A stretch of DNA of 64,000 nt from Octopus sinensis (Eukaryota). Within the stretch, counting starts at the first letter, position 1; each line of letters opens with the position of its first letter. This document shows, one piece after another, positions 26,268-30,683 of this stretch. The stretch spans positions 14,942,001 through 15,006,000 of the forward strand of contig NC_042997.1 of the NCBI RefSeq assembly GCF_006345805.1, read 5' to 3'. The notes under the pieces are model-generated. The model saw only the letters and a program-made list of their open reading frames with translations, searched no databases and was not told the origin of the DNA. The position numbers and the translations under genes are program-made.

Positions 26268-26272
26268 ATGCC
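26268..26272 (+). CDS. TEX14: TEX14-like pseudokinase, exon 1 coding part (ATG CC|G)
   Basis: AAAATG context, donor CC|GTAAGT, in-frame TAA upstream at 26244. Phase 2 matches the next exon. Confidence 0.45.
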
Positions 26273-26296
26273 GTAAGTGTTGTCTATATTTATCTT

Positions 26297-26339
<43 letters not shown>

Positions 26340-26500
26340 AATATTCTGAACTTCATTATTACAGCTGAGACAATTACATTTTAAACAATAATATCCCTTT
26401 CTTTTAACCTGCTGAAAAAGCTAAATCCACCCCTTAGAAGAATATCCTCTTTAAGTTTATAAAGTATTTTTCATTCGTTTACGGAATGTTTTCTTTTCAG

Positions 26501-26666
26501 GTTCAATAAAGAAAAGTTTCAGAGAAAAGTGTCGGAAATTTTCATTCACATATCGGGAAAGGGAAACCAACAACTTACCACTGAAAAGTCAAACTTAACT
26601 TCATGTTCTTCAGAAATTAAAGAAACAAAAATATTTGGATACTACACAGAGAATCAAATGAAGCGG
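26501..26666 (+). CDS. TEX14: TEX14-like pseudokinase, exon 2 (FNKEKFQ...KIFGYYTENQMKR)
   Basis: Acceptor ttttcttttcag, donor CGG|GTAAAC. Only one frame is open and it ends in phase 0. KIFGYY resembles a degenerate Gly-rich loop. Confidence 0.6.
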
Positions 26667-27827
26667 GTAAACGAAAGTTTATAACTCAAATATTTCAAAA
26701 TGTTTCTTTTGTATTTCCAATAAATTGGGGACTAGGTTATTCAATACTTCCTTCGGTAATTTTTAAAACGTTATTCGAATGAAGTTACGCTGCTATTTCT
26801 AATAGTTCTTAGTAATCATGTAGGGGCTTTTTTTTTTTTTTTTTTATTATTTAAGACTTATGATACTTGGAAGTCAGTCATGAAGGCTATCATAGTAGCT
26901 TTGAGTCCTCTTTAACTTAAAAAGCTTAGTTGTATGGCCTTCAAATGATGCAACTAGATTTCGCATACCGGCCCATCAAAGGATTGTGACTTGAGGCCTG
27001 TTCACCCGATCGTTATTGGGTCTTGAGTTTTTCATTTCTATTCATCACATCTCGGTTAGTTCTCCTTACCTAATGATCTAATCTGTTGTTAGCTAAACTA
27101 GCGAATGATGACTCCCCATCTGATAAGCTTTCTTTGAAATAGGTTATATAAAGCGTTAATGGAGAAGAGCTCAACTTTTGTAATCAGAAGCATCTAGTGT
27201 TATCGCAAAAAAGTACCTAGTTTAAGATATTACACTTATACTATGCCTCGCTGATAAGGTCTAACAAGACCAAAACTCCCAATTATCGAACTGCTAAAGA
27301 TCAAACTCCCTCAATTTTTTATTAATTTTAATTGGAATTTCGTGATTGTATCCTACAGCTTTCTTTTGTCAGTTATTTCTCGCAAGGAGTGCAAATTTAA
27401 TTAGCTTATATTGAGTACGTTAGAACCTACTTATAGTTCAGGAAATGAATAATGCAGGGTCTTGGTTAAATTGACCGCAGTATGATACTAGCACTTCAGT
27501 TCTCAATTTTGGGCTCAAGTTGATAACGGTACATCTGAACTTGGAACAATCTTACTTCAAATGTGGTACAGTAAAACATGCAGTTAATCTTGTCAACGTT
27601 TCTTTCTGAACGGGCGCAGATTAACTGATTTCTTTATTAACATCAAGAATAACAATTTTGGGAGGTTATTCACCAAAGTCTACCTAAGTACTATATTAAT
27701 GCTTATCGATCGCGAAAGGCAAAGTTAATATAGGCGGGATTTGATCTCGGAACGAAAAGCGCCGCAACTAGATAGATGCAGTACAATTTGACACTAACAA
27801 TCTTGCTAACATTTCCCTCGTGAGATA

Positions 27828-28219
27828 TCTTTATGTATAAAAGTAAGGTTGTGTGTCTGTCTCCTACGATTTAGATTCCTAACTACTCCCACATTTTGCG
27901 GTGCAGTTTAACCAAAACCGGGTATCTTATAGTCGTGATTCATATCGAGCCCTTCTGGGTATTAGCGCGCGTCTACGATGAGTCTACGATTTAAAAAAAA
28001 AATTACCATTTTTTTCCATTTTAATGCATTTTTTCGCTATTATATAAGGGAAGTAACTCTCTAAAAATGTCTACGATGAGTCAACGATTTAAAAAAAAAT
28101 TTACCATTTTTTTTCGACTTTTAATTAATTTTTTTGCTATTTTTTGGCTATAACTCTCTAAAAATGCTTATATAGTTATTTCCCTTACAAACCCGAGCAA
28201 CGCCGGGCGATACTGCTAG
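27828..28219 (+). mobile_element. Non-autonomous Helitron (392 bp) in intron 2 of the TEX14-like gene
   Basis: A|TC...hairpin CCCGAGCAACGCCGGG...CTAG|T. Ends 45 bp before the acceptor. Confidence 0.9.
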
Positions 28220-28264
28220 TTGGTAACAAAACTCTCATGCGACGTATCTTGCATTTTCTTTTAG

Positions 28265-28588
28265 CCACGATGTCTTCGACGTCTAACGTTAGTTCCATTT
28301 AAACAAATGACCAAAGAAAATATCGAGATACGACAACTTGTTCAACAAGGATTCGTCCTAATCATGTCCATCTGTCAATTGAAATATGCTGATACACTCC
28401 AAACTGAGAGTTGGTATTTTCTGAATGGAAGTATTCTATATTGCTCGTTGTATATTTGTCTCCATAAAATTGATGCTACATTCTCAGAAACCGACATTTT
28501 CATATTTTTGCGTCGGATTTATTATGCACTAGAATATCTCCATCAAAATGGTTTTATACACAGAAATATTACATCTCATGCTATTCGG
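28265..28588 (+). CDS. TEX14: TEX14-like pseudokinase, exon 3 (PRCLRRL...ALEYLHQNGFIHRNITSHAIR)
   Basis: Acceptor ttttcttttag at 28264, donor CGG|GTGAGT. Phase 0 at both ends. Kinase subdomains II-VIb. Confidence 0.8.
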
Positions 28589-29234
28589 GTGAGTACTACA
28601 AATGTTTTTCATTTATAATTGTACTATATATATAGCTTTACTATTCGGGAAGTTTTATTTACTAAATGTTCAACCTATCCTAACTCGTAGTTCGTTGACC
28701 GATATTTTTTTTTATGTTTTAGTTTCAATTTTTTTTTGCTTAAAAATTTTCCGAATTAAACTTTCGGTTGCAGTTTTCCTTTTTCAATGCAGTGTTTTGC
28801 GCATAGAAATTTTACGATTGACCCTGTATTCAGTTTGTAGAACTTGTCAGTCCCCACGAACGTAATTCTTCTACTAGATTTCTCGGTTTCACATTTTTTT
28901 TCTAATTTTAATTCACTTTACTAGGAGAAAACGTATCGTCATTCGTTTTTAAGCCGGCGGGATTTTTTCCCCCAGCTGATCGACTTGCGCAAAGGATCAC
29001 TAGTTGGTTCATATTTTCCTGTATGTGCAGCAGCTAAAGTTGCCTGAGTACATCACGTTTATTAAAGGATTTGTAATTGAAAATTTTGAACCAGTCATGA
29101 TTTGAAAATGTATACAAGTAATAACCACTCGTCATTTACTTGGCTTACCCGTCTTCTTAGTATGCAAAATTTCTTTTTACTCAATGTAAACAACTAAATC
29201 CTGAATTATTTTGTTTTATAATTTTTGTTCATAG

Positions 29235-30683
29235 ATTATGGATACTTACAGTGTGAAGCTAAGTAAATTTGAGTACATGCACGTTAAGGAAACTGAAGTA
29301 AATTGGACCACTGACGATTCGTGGAGGTGGATGTCACCAGAGACTCTACTGAGAAAGCAGTCAAGTTTAAAATCTGATATTTTTAGTTTTTGTTGTGTGT
29401 GTTTAGAATATTTTAGTAATTGTCTTCCATGGGATAAACGTTCACAGCTTTTTGTGAAGAAACATTACATCAACGGCAATAGTTTCCCACAAGATGACTT
29501 TTCTGTCCCAACTGAAATCAAGGAATGCTTTAGCAACGGTCTGGCAACTAAAAAGCATAAAAGAAAATTCAATATTCATCAATTAGAAACGGTCATGAAA
29601 TCGAGAGCGAATTGTACATTTGAAGCTAATTTGAACTATCCTAATGTTTCGAAATCGAGATACTCAAACCAAATCGAATTAAACCAGCAGCAATTAAAAT
29701 TAAAGACTCCTTCGAAAAGCATTCCTACTAAGAATTTTGCAGTTTTGAAGAATAGGCAGTCATGCGATGGTAATGCATCTAACAATAGTAACAAAACTGG
29801 TTTTAATCGTATTCAAACAGATTCAGTAAAATTTCTAATCAAGTATTTTGAAAATCGTTCAACTCCAAATGCTAACTCCAGGTATTTTAATTCGAAGAAC
29901 TTACGTCGAAGAACCCTTAGCTCGTGTAATCATTCCGCCACTATGAATTCTCCAGAAAAACTTCAAGTAAGTAGAGCGACTTTAATCATGGAAAGCCCAA
30001 GTGATAATGTATATATTAGCAACAGAACCAACCAGAAAACTCAATCACAAAACTTGACTAGTTTAGAAGAATTACAGACGCCTAAAAATACTTTACCAGG
30101 AATCCTGAATGCCAAAATTAGTCATTCAGATATCGGAGATCAAACAAAAAGAATGAATAGCCTTGTATATTTGCGCCGGCAAAGTTGTGTGTCTCAAAAA
30201 TTGTCTTTTAAGAATTCTTCTCCAGAAAACTCGTTTTCGGAATATCCTGCAACAGACTGTAACTTTGTGACTGCATCAACGGAACATTTTGATGCTGAGA
30301 GGGGTTTCTTTGTAAGCAAAACGTCGACTGCTTCATCAATCAGACGCAAGAGTTTCCCATTATATAGTTCTGCGTCCAAAACGCACTACCCGAGACTAAA
30401 TAAAGATTATAATCGGAATTTGAACTTTAAATATTCTCATTCATTTGACGAAATCATTTCTGAACAAAGGCCAGGAACCGGTAAAATACAGAAAACGGAA
30501 ACTAACCGAAAGACTTGTGCATCCAAAGATTTTGTAAAATCACAAGTGACTAAATGGGAGAACCACCCTCGTGAACATTTAATTAAATCGCAAGGAATTA
30601 ATTTGAAATTGGACTTTAAATATGCGATAGATAAAGATATTCACTTCAAAATTAATAGGTGGGAAAACACAATGAAAATCTAA
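29235..30683 (+). CDS. TEX14: TEX14-like pseudokinase, exon 4: C-lobe plus ~340-aa Ser/Asn/Lys-rich tail
   Basis: Acceptor ttttgttcatag in phase 0. Motifs KLSKFEYM, WMSPETLLRK, KSDIFSF, LPW, VKKHYINGN follow the recalled TEX14 pattern (RLTNLEYM, WAAPEVILQK, KSDIYSF, IPW, VKKAVVSGN). Confidence 0.85.
   Translation: MMDTYSVKLSKFEYMHVKETEVNWTTDDSWRWMSPETLLRKQSSLKSDIFSFCCVCLEYFSNCLPWDKRSQLFVKKHYINGNSFPQDDFSVPTEIKECFSNGLATKKHKRKFNIHQLETVMKSRANCTFEANLNYPNVSKSRYSNQIELNQQQLKLKTPSKSIPTKNFAVLKNRQSCDGNASNNSNKTGFNRIQTDSVKFLIKYFENRSTPNANSRYFNSKNLRRRTLSSCNHSATMNSPEKLQVSRATLIMESPSDNVYISNRTNQKTQSQNLTSLEELQTPKNTLPGILNAKISHSDIGDQTKRMNSLVYLRRQSCVSQKLSFKNSSPENSFSEYPATDCNFVTASTEHFDAERGFFVSKTSTASSIRRKSFPLYSSASKTHYPRLNKDYNRNLNFKYSHSFDEIISEQRPGTGKIQKTETNRKTCASKDFVKSQVTKWENHPREHLIKSQGINLKLDFKYAIDKDIHFKINRWENTMKI

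What the first reader, a model, noticed from the sequence alone, without database searches (positions are those of the whole stretch)
26268..30683. Compact cephalopod TEX14-like pseudokinase apparently lacking ankyrin repeats and the GPPxxxY motif
Seen: four exons join in phase through canonical GT-AG sites (5+166+324+1449 nt = 647 aa plus stop). The ORF track shows only two disjoint fragments of this. All three catalytic positions are lost: VAIK region reads CLRR, HRD reads HRN with no downstream Asn, and DFG reads KFE. Established: mammalian TEX14 is an ankyrin-pseudokinase that stabilises germ-cell intercellular bridges through a GPPxxxY motif binding CEP55. Inference: this protein follows the recalled TEX14 kinase pattern but has no GPP, and only ~1.4 kb separates it from the divergent gene, leaving little room for ankyrin exons. 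It could be a stripped-down germline bridge or abscission factor working by another mechanism.
Basis: partly seen in the sequence, partly recalled or inferred. Interest (0 to 1): 0.75.

Follow-up and report, generated by a model that had tools for sequence, protein, structure and literature searches.

The report
Octopus TEX14-family pseudokinase without ankyrins
This is a real, conserved octopus gene for a catalytically dead relative of TEX14, the germ-cell bridge protein, that has lost the ankyrin repeats, a recognisable kinase N-lobe and all seven ancestral kinase-domain introns; it is a stripped-down variant of a known family, not a new kind of protein.

Summary
The four-exon model is correct. 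It splices to 647 aa and is identical to NCBI's "uncharacterized protein LOC115218991" of Octopus sinensis. The same four exons occur in O. bimaculoides and Argonauta hians.

The kinase-like domain belongs to the TEX14 family. It scores 65-87 bits against TEX14 proteins, 20-45 bits against other kinase domains and 36 bits against the best PDB kinase. It carries the family's degenerate catalytic motifs (HRNITSHA, KFE).

No ankyrin coding sequence was found in the 64-kb window or at the two orthologous loci. No ankyrin-bearing cephalopod TEX14 appeared in the protein searches.

- TEX14-like ankyrin-pseudokinases exist across Bilateria. GPPxxxY occurs only in bony vertebrates, so its absence here is the invertebrate norm.
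- AlphaFold2 folds only the C-lobe (residues ~116-299) with confidence. The tail is disordered but keeps one protostome TEX14 tail motif (DSVKFLIKYFE).
- Seven kinase-domain introns shared by oyster, limpet and ray are all missing. Two introns lie at new positions and the last exon is 1,449 nt. This suggests a 5'-truncated processed copy.

Function is inferred only: an inert scaffold, probably germline. It is a new variant of a known kind, of moderate interest.

The parts
26152..26179 (+). Promoter-proximal block (CTGATTTGTTATTTCGATAACCAACC) conserved between Octopus and Argonauta, about 90-115 nt upstream of the ATG
   Evidence: Three-species alignment. The rest of the upstream 10 kb has no Octopus-Argonauta similarity apart from repeats. 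Its role as a promoter element is inferred.
26216..26223 (+). TATA-like element TATATAAA, 45 nt upstream of the ATG
   Evidence: Read directly. Kept in O. bimaculoides (TATATATA) but not in Argonauta. Weak evidence in 32% GC DNA.
26268..26272 (+). Coding exon 1: ATG plus 2 nt, donor gtaagt (phase 2)
   Evidence: ATGCC|gt occurs in both Octopus species and ATGCG|gt in Argonauta. Exon 2 has no ATG before M55, yet residues 3-54 are conserved and the N-terminal third has dN/dS 0.36.
26501..26666 (+). Coding exon 2 (residues 2-57): remnant of the linker and glycine-loop region (SGKGNQ) and the possible beta3 Lys K56
   Evidence: G21 invariant, G23 nearly invariant against the TEX14 GFG loop. AF2 pLDDT is below 50 here.
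26667..28264 (+). Intron 2, phase 0, at a position and phase not found in canonical TEX14 genes. Bases 27829-28219 are an O. sinensis-specific insertion.
   Evidence: for position and phase. for the gap in the alignment with O. bimaculoides.
28265..28588 (+). Coding exon 3 (residues 58-165): degenerate N-lobe remainder, hinge, and C-lobe up to the catalytic loop
   Evidence: Found directly by tblastn with mollusc and nemertean TEX14-like proteins. Conserved at DNA level with Argonauta.
28559..28582 (+). Degenerate catalytic loop H156-R157-N158-I-T-S-H-A163 (HRD Asp is Asn; catalytic Asn is Ala), the TEX14 signature H[RCG]x[ILV][ST]SHA[VI]
   Evidence: The signature occurs in 88/128 family members and 0/61 other kinase hits.
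28589..29234 (+). Intron 3, phase 0, between SHAIR and IMDTY: a new position lying between ancestral introns 4 and 5
29235..30683 (+). Coding exon 4 (residues 166-647 plus stop): rest of the C-lobe and the whole tail in one uninterrupted exon
   Evidence: The equivalent region of the oyster gene is split into many exons.
29265..29273 (+). DFG equivalent K176-F177-E178 (YFE in O. bimaculoides; NFE, the TEX14 norm, in Argonauta)
29235..29636 (+). Second part of the confidently folded C-lobe (residues 166-299). The first part is 28439-28588 (residues 116-165).
   Evidence: AF2 pLDDT 82-95 in two runs. Foldseek matches RAF, JAK and Eph kinase C-lobes. dN/dS is lowest here, 0.15-0.33.
29820..29858 (+). 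Tail motif D361-SVKFLIKYFENR-373, matching the protostome TEX14 tail motif GSV[KR]NLVxx[FY]Q
   Evidence: The core is invariant in four octopods. It is the best window of a PSSM built without octopods, shuffle p 0.0007-0.003. It lies in the only tail segment conserved at DNA level with Argonauta, 29818-29959. AF2 predicts a short helix at 365-369.
29907..29924 (+). Conserved basophilic site R390-R-T-L-S-S395 (RRxT/S)
   Evidence: Invariant columns R390, R391, T392, S394, S395. Its role as a phospho-acceptor is inferred.
30342..30371 (+). Conserved RRKSFPLYSS (535-544), which fits RxxSxP, the 14-3-3 mode-1 pattern
   Evidence: Invariant R535, R536, S538, P540, Y542, S543, S544. The pattern match rests on recalled knowledge and no binding was tested.
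30528..30560 (+). Second, weaker motif-like copy D597-FVKSQVTKWE-607
   Evidence: Invariant V599, K600, Q602, V603, W606, E607 in the octopods. The resemblance to DSVKFLIKYFE was seen by eye only.
30869..30874 (+). Candidate polyadenylation signal AATAAA, about 190 nt after the stop codon
   Evidence: Read directly. Common by chance in AT-rich DNA.

Best explanation
SHOWN: the locus is an intact four-exon gene conserved among octopods. Its product has a kinase-like domain of the TEX14 family and no ankyrin repeats. Its N-terminal ~115 residues do not fold as a kinase N-lobe in prediction. The C-lobe is well conserved and lacks the catalytic Asp, the catalytic Asn and the DFG Asp. The ~350-residue tail is predicted disordered.

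INFERRED (about 0.85): it descends from the bilaterian ankyrin-pseudokinase TEX14 gene and is the only TEX14-type gene annotated in octopods.

INFERRED (about 0.55): the gene body passed through a processed, 5'-truncated cDNA copy. That would remove the ankyrin exons and all seven ancestral kinase-domain introns at once. A new first exon carrying the ATG and two internal introns would have been acquired before Octopus and Argonauta split.

INFERRED mechanism (about 0.5): it cannot phosphorylate. It works as a docking scaffold in which the C-lobe is a protein-binding surface. The tail offers short linear motifs: the retained protostome TEX14 motif SV[KR]xL[IV]xx[FY][EQ], and three conserved RRxS/T sites, one of which fits the 14-3-3 pattern.

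By analogy with TEX14 the likely setting is germ-cell division (midbody or intercellular bridge, or kinetochore). It would act through partners other than CEP55, because the CEP55-binding GPPxxxY motif is a bony-vertebrate addition.
For: Gene model and conservation:
- The model and its identity to the NCBI protein.
- The same exon structure in three species.
- Purifying selection: dN/dS is 0.33-0.51 overall and 0.15-0.33 in the C-lobe, with dS about 1.2 to Argonauta.

Family assignment:
- The exhaustive profile search gives ankyrin + kinase proteins named TEX14 as the best single-domain hits.
- The octopus domain scores 65-87 bits against TEX14, 20-45 bits against other kinase domains and 36 bits against the best PDB kinase.
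- A TEX14-only HMM scores the octopods at 144-151 bits and other kinases at about 123 bits or less.
- The signature motif is in 88/128 family members and 0/61 others.
- In the NJ tree, TEX14 plus octopods separate from the outgroups in 98/100 bootstraps.

No ankyrin:
- tblastn with an ankyrin consensus and with nine TEX14 N-termini finds nothing in the window, L002 or L003.
- There is no conserved upstream block apart from a 28-nt promoter-proximal one.
- No cephalopod ankyrin-bearing TEX14 is among the 120 best hits of a TEX14-like profile.

Fold: two AF2 runs and Foldseek.

Tail motif.

Introns:
- Seven introns with phases 0,2,2,0,2,1,0 are shared by oyster, limpet and ray, and by another lophotrochozoan at the five junctions that could be resolved there.
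- The octopod gene has none of them and has two others, both phase 0.

GPPxxxY distribution.

Male-germline expression of an annelid Tex14 homologue: PMC13602260.
Against: - In the NJ tree the octopods sit outside all other TEX14 proteins (84%) rather than inside molluscs, so orthology is not shown by the tree. This could be long-branch attraction.
- The margin in the reciprocal HMM is only about 20-30 bits.
- The tail-motif match is short. A 35-aa motif HMM and a full-length HMM did not pick it up.
- A retrocopy origin needs two internal intron gains, which are uncommon in animals.
- Octopod intron 2 lies only 3-12 codons from ancestral intron 2, depending on the alignment, though in a different phase.
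- No octopus genome could be searched at DNA level, so an unannotated canonical TEX14 is not excluded.
- There are no expression, localisation or binding data for this protein.
- The low AF2 confidence for the N-terminus may reflect a shallow alignment (19-40 sequences).
Confidence: 0.7

Rival explanations
1. It is an octopod-specific truncated paralogue, and a canonical ankyrin-bearing TEX14 still exists elsewhere in octopod genomes but is unannotated. The stripped-down copy would then have a subsidiary or new role.
For: - No genome-wide DNA search was possible.
- The tree places the octopods outside the canonical clade.
- Fast evolution (dN/dS up to 0.5) fits a young or relaxed duplicate.
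- Unplaced AT-rich ankyrin-pseudokinase transcripts of unknown taxon exist (L008 and P0204).
Against: - A TEX14-like profile retrieved relatives from molluscs, crustaceans, annelids and vertebrates at E down to 1e-285. No cephalopod was among the best 120.
- Annotated proteins of O. sinensis, O. bimaculoides and Argonauta hians are in that database.
- The exhaustive search found no further octopod relative.
Confidence: 0.2
2. It is the in-place orthologue. The ancestral gene lost its 5' ankyrin exons by deletion and lost its introns by recombination with a reverse-transcribed mRNA. It then gained or shifted two introns. No retroposition to a new site occurred.
For: - Octopod intron 2 lies near ancestral intron 2 (3-12 codons away).
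- cDNA-mediated intron loss is an established mechanism and typically clears runs of 3' introns, which matches the 1,449-nt last exon.
Against: - The phase of intron 2 differs (0 against 2).
- Intron 3 has no ancestral counterpart.
- Simultaneous loss of the 5' region and of at least six introns is explained more simply by one 5'-truncated processed copy.
Confidence: 0.3
3. The gene model is incomplete, and ankyrin-coding exons lie further upstream than the 26 kb held in the window.
For: - Canonical genes can be long (88 kb in oyster).
- The 5-nt first coding exon is a computational model whose RNA support could not be checked.
Against: - Three independent annotations give the same start.
- A promoter-proximal conserved block and a TATA-like element lie just upstream of the ATG.
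- There is no TEX14 N-terminal similarity in 26 kb upstream here, or in 10 kb upstream in two other species.
Confidence: 0.07
4. The domain belongs to another TKL-type or pseudokinase family and resembles TEX14 only by convergent decay of catalytic residues.
For: - PDB and Foldseek matches are generic (BTK, PLK4, BRAF, JAK).
- No TEX14 kinase-domain structure appeared among the PDB matches.
Against: - There is a 40-50 bit preference for TEX14 over all other kinase domains seen.
- The specific motifs TSHA, NFEY-type, WMSPE and SD[IV][FY]SFC are shared.
- The tail motif is shared.
- Bootstrap support is 98%.
Confidence: 0.03
5. It is a decaying or non-functional gene that has merely kept an open frame.
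For: - dN/dS is high for the tail and the N-terminus (0.4-0.8).
- The N-lobe is degenerate.
Against: - The frame, the splice sites and the exon phases are intact in three species separated by dS of about 1.2.
- C-lobe dN/dS is 0.15-0.33.
- Invariant motif blocks exist in the tail.
Confidence: 0.03

Closest known systems
Vertebrate TEX14 (inactive serine/threonine-protein kinase TEX14, SgK307)
   Same: The kinase-like domain belongs to the same family. It has the same degenerate catalytic loop ([ST]SHA[VI] in place of the Asp/Asn-bearing loop) and the same DFG replacement (xFE; NFE in Argonauta). A long disordered tail follows the domain.
   Different: - No N-terminal ankyrin repeats.
- About 23 residues of the TEX14-specific N-lobe insert are missing.
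- No GPPxxxY CEP55-binding motif.
- The tail is 350 residues, against 500-1,400 in the relatives examined.
- None of the seven conserved kinase-domain introns is present.
Protostome TEX14-like ankyrin-pseudokinases (e.g. Gigantopelta aegis LOC121379942, Crassostrea virginica 'TEX14-like', Tubulanus polymorphus LOC141903421)
   Same: The kinase-like domain, the absence of GPPxxxY, and the core of the conserved tail motif GSV[KR]NLVxx[FY]Q, which reads DSV[KR]FLIKYFE in octopods.
   Different: - The octopod protein lacks the ankyrin repeats and the linker.
- It lacks the W[FY]GG lead-in and the H..Q[AS][VI]L.G extension of the tail module, and also the VKPASH and EEFYFDD blocks (read by eye; one search found no tail match).
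- Its gene has a different intron set.
KIND (kinase non-catalytic C-lobe) domains of SPIRE, PTPN13 and KNDC1
   Same: Working analogy only: a kinase C-lobe kept as a protein-binding module, without a functional N-lobe or catalysis. What KIND domains do is taken from established knowledge.
   Different: No sequence membership. Pfam reports only the PK_Tyr_Ser-Thr and Pkinase families at E up to 1. The octopod N-terminal third is still under some constraint.
Orphan or replacement retrogenes (processed copies that outlive their parental gene)
   Same: All ancestral introns are lost, the copy is 5'-truncated, the start codon sits on a newly recruited upstream exon, and no parental gene was detected.
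   Different: Two introns lie inside the coding region. No poly(A) remnant or target-site duplication is visible. No synteny test was possible.

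Membership tests
TEX14 family (ankyrin-pseudokinase) | Kinase-like domain closer to TEX14 than to any other kinase family, in both search directions | tested here: met
   - Forward: the best single-domain hits of an exhaustive profile search are TEX14 proteins. Scores are 65-87 bits against 20-45 bits for other kinase domains.
- Reverse: a TEX14-only HMM gives 144-151 bits, against about 123 bits or less for other kinases.
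- NJ bootstrap is 98%.
TEX14 family (ankyrin-pseudokinase) | Family-specific degenerate catalytic motifs: H[RCG]x[ILV][ST]SHA[VI] and xN/K-[FL]-E-[YF] in place of HRD...N and DFG | tested here: met
   The protein reads FIHRNITSHAIRIMDTYSVKLSKFEYM. The signature is in 88/128 family members and 0/61 other kinase hits.
TEX14 family (ankyrin-pseudokinase) | Three N-terminal ankyrin repeats | tested here: not met
   Pfam finds no Ank domain in the protein. tblastn with an ankyrin consensus and with nine TEX14 N-termini finds nothing in the window, L002 or L003. All eight canonical relatives tested have Ank domains.
TEX14 family (ankyrin-pseudokinase) | GPPxxxY motif that binds CEP55 (defines the mammalian mechanism) | tested here: not met
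   Found in 0/4 octopods, and also in 0/41 protostome, 0/2 tunicate, 0/2 lamprey and 0/6 chondrichthyan relatives, against 36/73 bony vertebrates. It therefore defines the bony-vertebrate subgroup, not the family.
TEX14 family (ankyrin-pseudokinase) | Conserved gene structure: seven kinase-domain introns with phases 0,2,2,0,2,1,0 | tested here: not met
   The pattern is shared by oyster, limpet and ray, and by a fourth lophotrochozoan at the five junctions that were resolved there. The octopod gene has none at the same position and phase, and has two phase-0 introns elsewhere.
TEX14 family (ankyrin-pseudokinase) | Protostome tail motif GSV[KR]NLVxx[FY]Q | tested here: inconclusive
   The core matches, and it is the best PSSM window in all four octopod tails (shuffle p 0.0007-0.003). 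It lies in the only tail stretch conserved with Argonauta at DNA level. The longer 35-aa motif HMM does not detect it.
TEX14 family (ankyrin-pseudokinase) | Testis or germline expression and localisation to intercellular bridges | not testable with these tools
   No expression data could be reached, and no paper links TEX14 with octopus. The only indirect support is an annelid Tex14 homologue expressed with spermatogenesis genes (PMC13602260).
KIND domain proteins | Sequence match to the KIND family model | tested here: not met
   The Pfam scan at E up to 1 returns only PK_Tyr_Ser-Thr and Pkinase.
Processed retrogene | Loss of all parental introns | tested here: met
   None of the seven ancestral kinase-domain introns is retained, and the last exon runs 1,449 nt without interruption.
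Processed retrogene | Location away from the parental locus; poly(A) remnant and target-site duplication | not testable with these tools
   No other gene lies within 10 kb, so no neighbourhood comparison was possible. No A-run follows the 3' end, which is expected for an old insertion.

The most novel reading that the evidence does not exclude
In the octopod lineage a 5'-truncated processed copy of the ancient ankyrin-pseudokinase TEX14 gene replaced its parent. What selection kept (the pseudokinase C-lobe plus the short tail motif SV[KR]xL[IV]xx[FY][EQ]) marks the minimal, CEP55-independent core of TEX14 function. That function predates vertebrates and the GPPxxxY mechanism. The octopod protein would then be a natural minimal TEX14, pointing to the ancestral partner of the family in germ-cell division.
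Probability: 0.3. Interest if true: 0.6.

Novelty: new variant of a known kind. Interest (0 to 1): 0.45.

Why it matters
- Mammalian TEX14 is the key factor that keeps germ cells joined by blocking abscission through CEP55. A 2026 review traces both TEX14 and CEP55 only to vertebrates (PMC13216642).
- The searches here show that the ankyrin-pseudokinase architecture is bilaterian, while GPPxxxY was found only in bony vertebrates. The family must therefore have an older, unknown mode of action.
- The octopod protein is a natural deletion experiment. It keeps the C-lobe and one short tail motif under constraint and discards the rest, which narrows where the ancestral function sits.
- It is also a possible case of a processed copy outliving its parental gene and acquiring new introns.
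- None of this is a new kind of system. The protein is already in databases as 'uncharacterized', and its function is still inferred.

Tried and rejected
- Rfam scan of the window: no match.
- Ankyrin consensus and real TEX14 N-termini against the window and the two orthologous loci: nothing.
- Pfam on seven upstream ORFs, looking for the claimed divergent gene: nothing above any cut-off.
- Pfam on five other ORFs in the window: nothing significant.
- A full-length lophotrochozoan HMM against the octopod proteins: only the kinase domain aligns meaningfully.
- The 35-aa tail-module HMM does not reach the octopod motif. Only the 13-aa core PSSM does.
- P0102 carries HG...TSHA and ...YFE like the octopods and was suspected to be a cephalopod canonical TEX14. 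It is from the ostracod Notodromas monacha.
- P0104 lies on a 29-Mb chromosome with a 6-kb gene, so I judged it unlikely to be a cephalopod.
- P0139/L008 (Logan run SRR21620664) could not be assigned to a taxon.
- The NJ tree could not place the octopods within molluscs.
- The Octopus sinensis versus O. bimaculoides DNA comparison is uninformative for exon finding, because the whole locus is 81-94% identical.
- Literature searches for TEX14 in octopus found nothing.
- AF2 could not settle whether the beta3 Lys is K56 or is lost at V67, because the N-terminus has low confidence in both runs.

Full report
**1. The observation**

The four segments 26268-26272, 26501-26666, 28265-28588 and 29235-30683 on the + strand are bordered by GT and AG. 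They add up to 1944 nt and translate to 647 residues plus a stop. The mechanical ORF list shows only pieces of this.

The product is identical, over its full length, to NCBI's 'uncharacterized protein LOC115218991 [Octopus sinensis]'. The window lies on chromosome CM016859.1 near 14.97 Mb.

Orthologues were found in three further sources:
- O. bimaculoides: 655 aa, 85% identical.
- Argonauta hians: 641 aa, 44% identical.
- A fragment from another octopod read set.

I rebuilt the coding sequences at the two other loci. The same four exons with the same phases are used, including the odd 5-nt first coding exon (ATGCC|gt, or ATGCG|gt in Argonauta).

Exon 2 has no ATG before M55. Yet residues 3-54 are conserved and the N-terminal 114 residues have dN/dS of 0.36 to Argonauta. 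An upstream exon carrying the start codon is therefore required.

dN/dS is 0.33-0.51 overall, 0.15-0.33 in the C-lobe and 0.42-0.55 in the tail, with dS of about 1.2 to Argonauta. The gene evolves fast but is under selection.

RNA-level support for the junctions could not be checked.

**2. The catalytic residues**

Alignment to solved kinases and to TEX14 proteins gives the following:
- HRD reads H156-R157-N158. The two other species have HGN.
- The catalytic-loop Asn is Ala163.
- DFG reads K176-F177-E178. O. bimaculoides has YFE and Argonauta has NFE.

The third claim, that VAIK reads CLRR, is not secure. MAFFT alignments guided by TEX14 align NQMK56 with TEX14 VTVK. That keeps the Lys in all three octopods and keeps the spacing to the alphaC Glu (E75). 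An alternative that I read by eye pairs Argonauta RVTVT with TEX14 RVTVK. It puts the position at V67 of RRLTLV, where the Lys is lost. The structure prediction cannot decide between them (see section 5).

**3. The family**

Pfam sees only generic kinase families, and only from profile position 72 onward. The best PDB kinases reach just 36 bits.

An exhaustive profile search of 1.84 billion representatives found the octopod proteins first. Below them were two kinds of hit:
- Multi-kinase protist proteins, whose scores are sums over several domains.
- Single-domain hits in which the kinase domain lies at residues ~260-520 of proteins 1,000-1,900 aa long.

All eight of the second kind that I scanned carry N-terminal ankyrin repeats. 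The named ones are TEX14 or TEX14-like, from ray, frogs, a caecilian, an alligator, a lungfish and a tortoise. Unnamed equivalents come from a gastropod, a tunicate, a mussel and an annelid.

Several tests agree on the family:
- With database size matched to the PDB search, the octopus domain scores 65-87 bits against TEX14 proteins and 20-45 bits per domain against the others.
- A TEX14-only HMM built without octopods scores them at 144-151 bits, above every non-TEX14 kinase held (about 123 bits or less).
- The signature H[RCG]x[ILV][ST]SHA[VI] is present in the octopods, in 88/128 family members and in 0/61 other hits.
- In an NJ tree the octopods plus TEX14 separate from the outgroups in 98/100 bootstraps.

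In that tree the octopods sit outside all other TEX14 proteins (84/100), as a long branch would. Membership of the family by kinase domain is well supported. Orthology is not shown by the tree.

**4. Ankyrin repeats and GPPxxxY**

A designed ankyrin consensus gives no significant tblastn hit in the 64-kb window. The first 215 residues of nine TEX14 relatives give none in the window or in the 24-kb loci of the two other species. The same proteins detect exons 3 and 4 directly.

Between Octopus and Argonauta, DNA similarity is limited to four places:
- exon 3;
- the start of exon 4;
- the tail-motif region;
- a 28-nt block about 100 nt upstream of the ATG.

A profile of invertebrate ankyrin-pseudokinases retrieved the family from bivalves, gastropods, a chiton, crustaceans, an annelid and all vertebrate classes. 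No cephalopod was among the best 120 hits.

The 'divergent gene 1.4 kb away' is not in the annotation. No other gene is called within 10 kb, and upstream ORFs have no Pfam match.

GPPxxxY is present in 36/73 bony-vertebrate TEX14 proteins, at a constant place. It is absent from every shark or ray (0/6), lamprey (0/2), tunicate (0/2) and protostome (0/41) relative examined. A 2026 review says that TEX14 and CEP55 trace only to vertebrates. For TEX14 the database hits contradict this. For the motif they fit it. The absence of GPPxxxY in octopus is therefore the ordinary invertebrate state.

**5. Fold**

I ran AlphaFold2 twice: once on the full length with 40 sequences, and once on residues 1-305 with a trimmed 19-sequence alignment. 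Both runs give the same picture:
- Residues ~116-299 have pLDDT of 82-95.
- Residues 1-115 have pLDDT below 50 (blocks of 10 residues average 22-57) and no beta-sheet N-lobe.
- The tail is disordered, with a short helix at 365-369.

Foldseek matches RAF, JAK and Eph kinases over about 185 columns, that is the C-lobe.

Compared with canonical TEX14, the octopods also lack about 23 residues of the family-specific insert between the glycine loop and beta3. The protein looks like a C-lobe module with a degenerate N-terminal extension. The shallow alignments are a caveat.

**6. Tail**

The most conserved tail block in the octopods is DSV[KR]FLIKYFE (361-371).

Independently, the most conserved tail block in mollusc, nemertean and ostracod TEX14-like proteins is W[FY]GG.GSV[KR]NLVxx[FY]Q....

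A PSSM of the 13-residue core, built without octopods, picks exactly the octopod block as the best window in all four tails. The shuffle p-value is 0.0007-0.003. The longer module HMM and a full-length HMM do not reach it, so I rate this as suggestive.

Other invariant tail blocks are RRRTLSS, RRQS and RRKSFPLYSS. The last fits RxxSxP, the 14-3-3 pattern. That reading rests on recalled knowledge and was not tested.

**7. Gene structure**

In oyster, limpet and ray the kinase domain is cut by seven introns at the same places with phases 0,2,2,0,2,1,0. A further lophotrochozoan agrees at the five junctions I could resolve. The seven positions are:
- after GFG[KR]V;
- after ..M.|S;
- before [KQS].[RH]HP;
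- after LH.[KR];
- after NFEY...;
- before ..PW;
- at the end of the domain.

The octopod gene has none of these. Its two internal introns are both phase 0 and lie at NQMKR|PRC and SHAIR|IMDTY. Its last exon runs 1,449 nt without interruption, from beta7 to the stop.

Intron 2 lies 3-12 codons from ancestral intron 2, depending on the alignment, but in another phase.

The loss of all ancestral introns, together with the loss of the whole 5' part and a start codon carried on a separate small exon, is most simply explained by a 5'-truncated processed copy that later gained introns. In-place cDNA-mediated intron loss is the main alternative. I could not test synteny or search octopus genomes.

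**8. How it most likely works**

Shown: the protein lacks the residues needed for phosphotransfer, and a kinase C-lobe and a few tail motifs are under constraint.

Inferred: it is a scaffold. The C-lobe would bind a partner, and the disordered tail would carry docking and phospho-regulated motifs.

By analogy with TEX14 the setting is probably germ-cell division. The only indirect support is that an annelid Tex14 homologue is expressed with spermatogenesis genes (PMC13602260). CEP55 capture through GPPxxxY cannot be the mechanism.

**9. Verdict**

The gene and its TEX14 affinity are real, and so is the lack of ankyrin repeats. The lack of GPPxxxY is not remarkable. The remodelled gene structure and the C-lobe-only fold are the new points. 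This is a new variant of a known kind, of moderate interest.

Noticed in passing
related proteins: Ankyrin + pseudokinase proteins of the TEX14 type occur in bivalves, gastropods, a chiton, a nemertean, annelids, copepod, barnacle, Daphnia, lobster, an ostracod and tunicates. A 2026 review (PMC13216642) states that TEX14 traces only to vertebrates.
   Followed up: partly
related proteins: GPPxxxY is found in 36/73 bony-vertebrate TEX14 proteins at residues ~640-865. It is found in 0/6 sharks and rays, 0/2 lampreys, 0/2 tunicates and 0/41 protostomes. The CEP55-binding motif looks like an innovation of bony vertebrates.
   Followed up: partly
related proteins: A ~35-residue tail module, W[FY]GG.GSV[KR]NLVxx[FY]Q.....H.[FL].Q[AS][VI]L.G, is conserved in mollusc and nemertean TEX14-like proteins and in part in an ostracod. 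No Pfam family or known function could be attached to it.
   Followed up: partly
L004, L005, L006, L007: Seven kinase-domain introns with phases 0,2,2,0,2,1,0 are shared between oyster, limpet and ray TEX14-type genes, and by an unidentified lophotrochozoan at the five junctions that were resolved. This is a deeply conserved gene structure.
   Followed up: yes
window 45320-50107, 52599-53136, 53423-60088, 60295-60729, 61729-62397: Very long degenerate (AT)n / (TATG)n-type simple-repeat arrays, more than 12 kb in total, fill the right quarter of the window and produce the many 'YIYIYI' pseudo-ORFs.
   Followed up: partly
window 3299-3509, 15940-16129, 50693-50934; ORF-like copies at 4044-4463, 15918-16262, 17976-18374: A dispersed repeat family with internal 65-84 bp tandem units occurs at least four times and gives similar ORF translations (MLAWVGRF...). 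It is probably a SINE-like element. It was not classified.
   Followed up: no
window 27829-28219 (intron 2): About 390 bp just upstream of the exon 3 acceptor has no counterpart in O. bimaculoides. It carries a duplicated 'gtctacgatgagtc.acgatttaaaaaaaa' unit and the string 'acccgagcaacgccgggcgatactgctagt', which by eye seems to recur near 24440. It looks like a species-specific mobile-element insertion.
   Followed up: no
window 26152-26179: A promoter-proximal block is conserved between Octopus and Argonauta. It contains the dyad GTTAT..ATAAC, which resembles an RFX X-box. That resemblance is from memory only and was not tested.
   Followed up: no
L008 (Logan SRR21620664 contig, ORF 1053-2384) and P0204: An AT-rich contig has ankyrin repeats and a TEX14-type pseudokinase in one open frame. 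It is about 40% identical to scallop and chiton proteins and 45% to an unnamed ENA protein. The taxon could not be determined, so it cannot be excluded as a cephalopod canonical TEX14.
   Followed up: partly
L003 3848-4456: At the Argonauta locus, a called 203-aa ORF 5.5 kb upstream of the orthologue has no Pfam hit and no counterpart in the Octopus window. It may be a mobile-element fragment.
   Followed up: partly
window 31544-31814: A 151-bp unit is repeated 1.8 times about 0.9 kb downstream of the gene's stop codon. Its origin is unknown.
   Followed up: no
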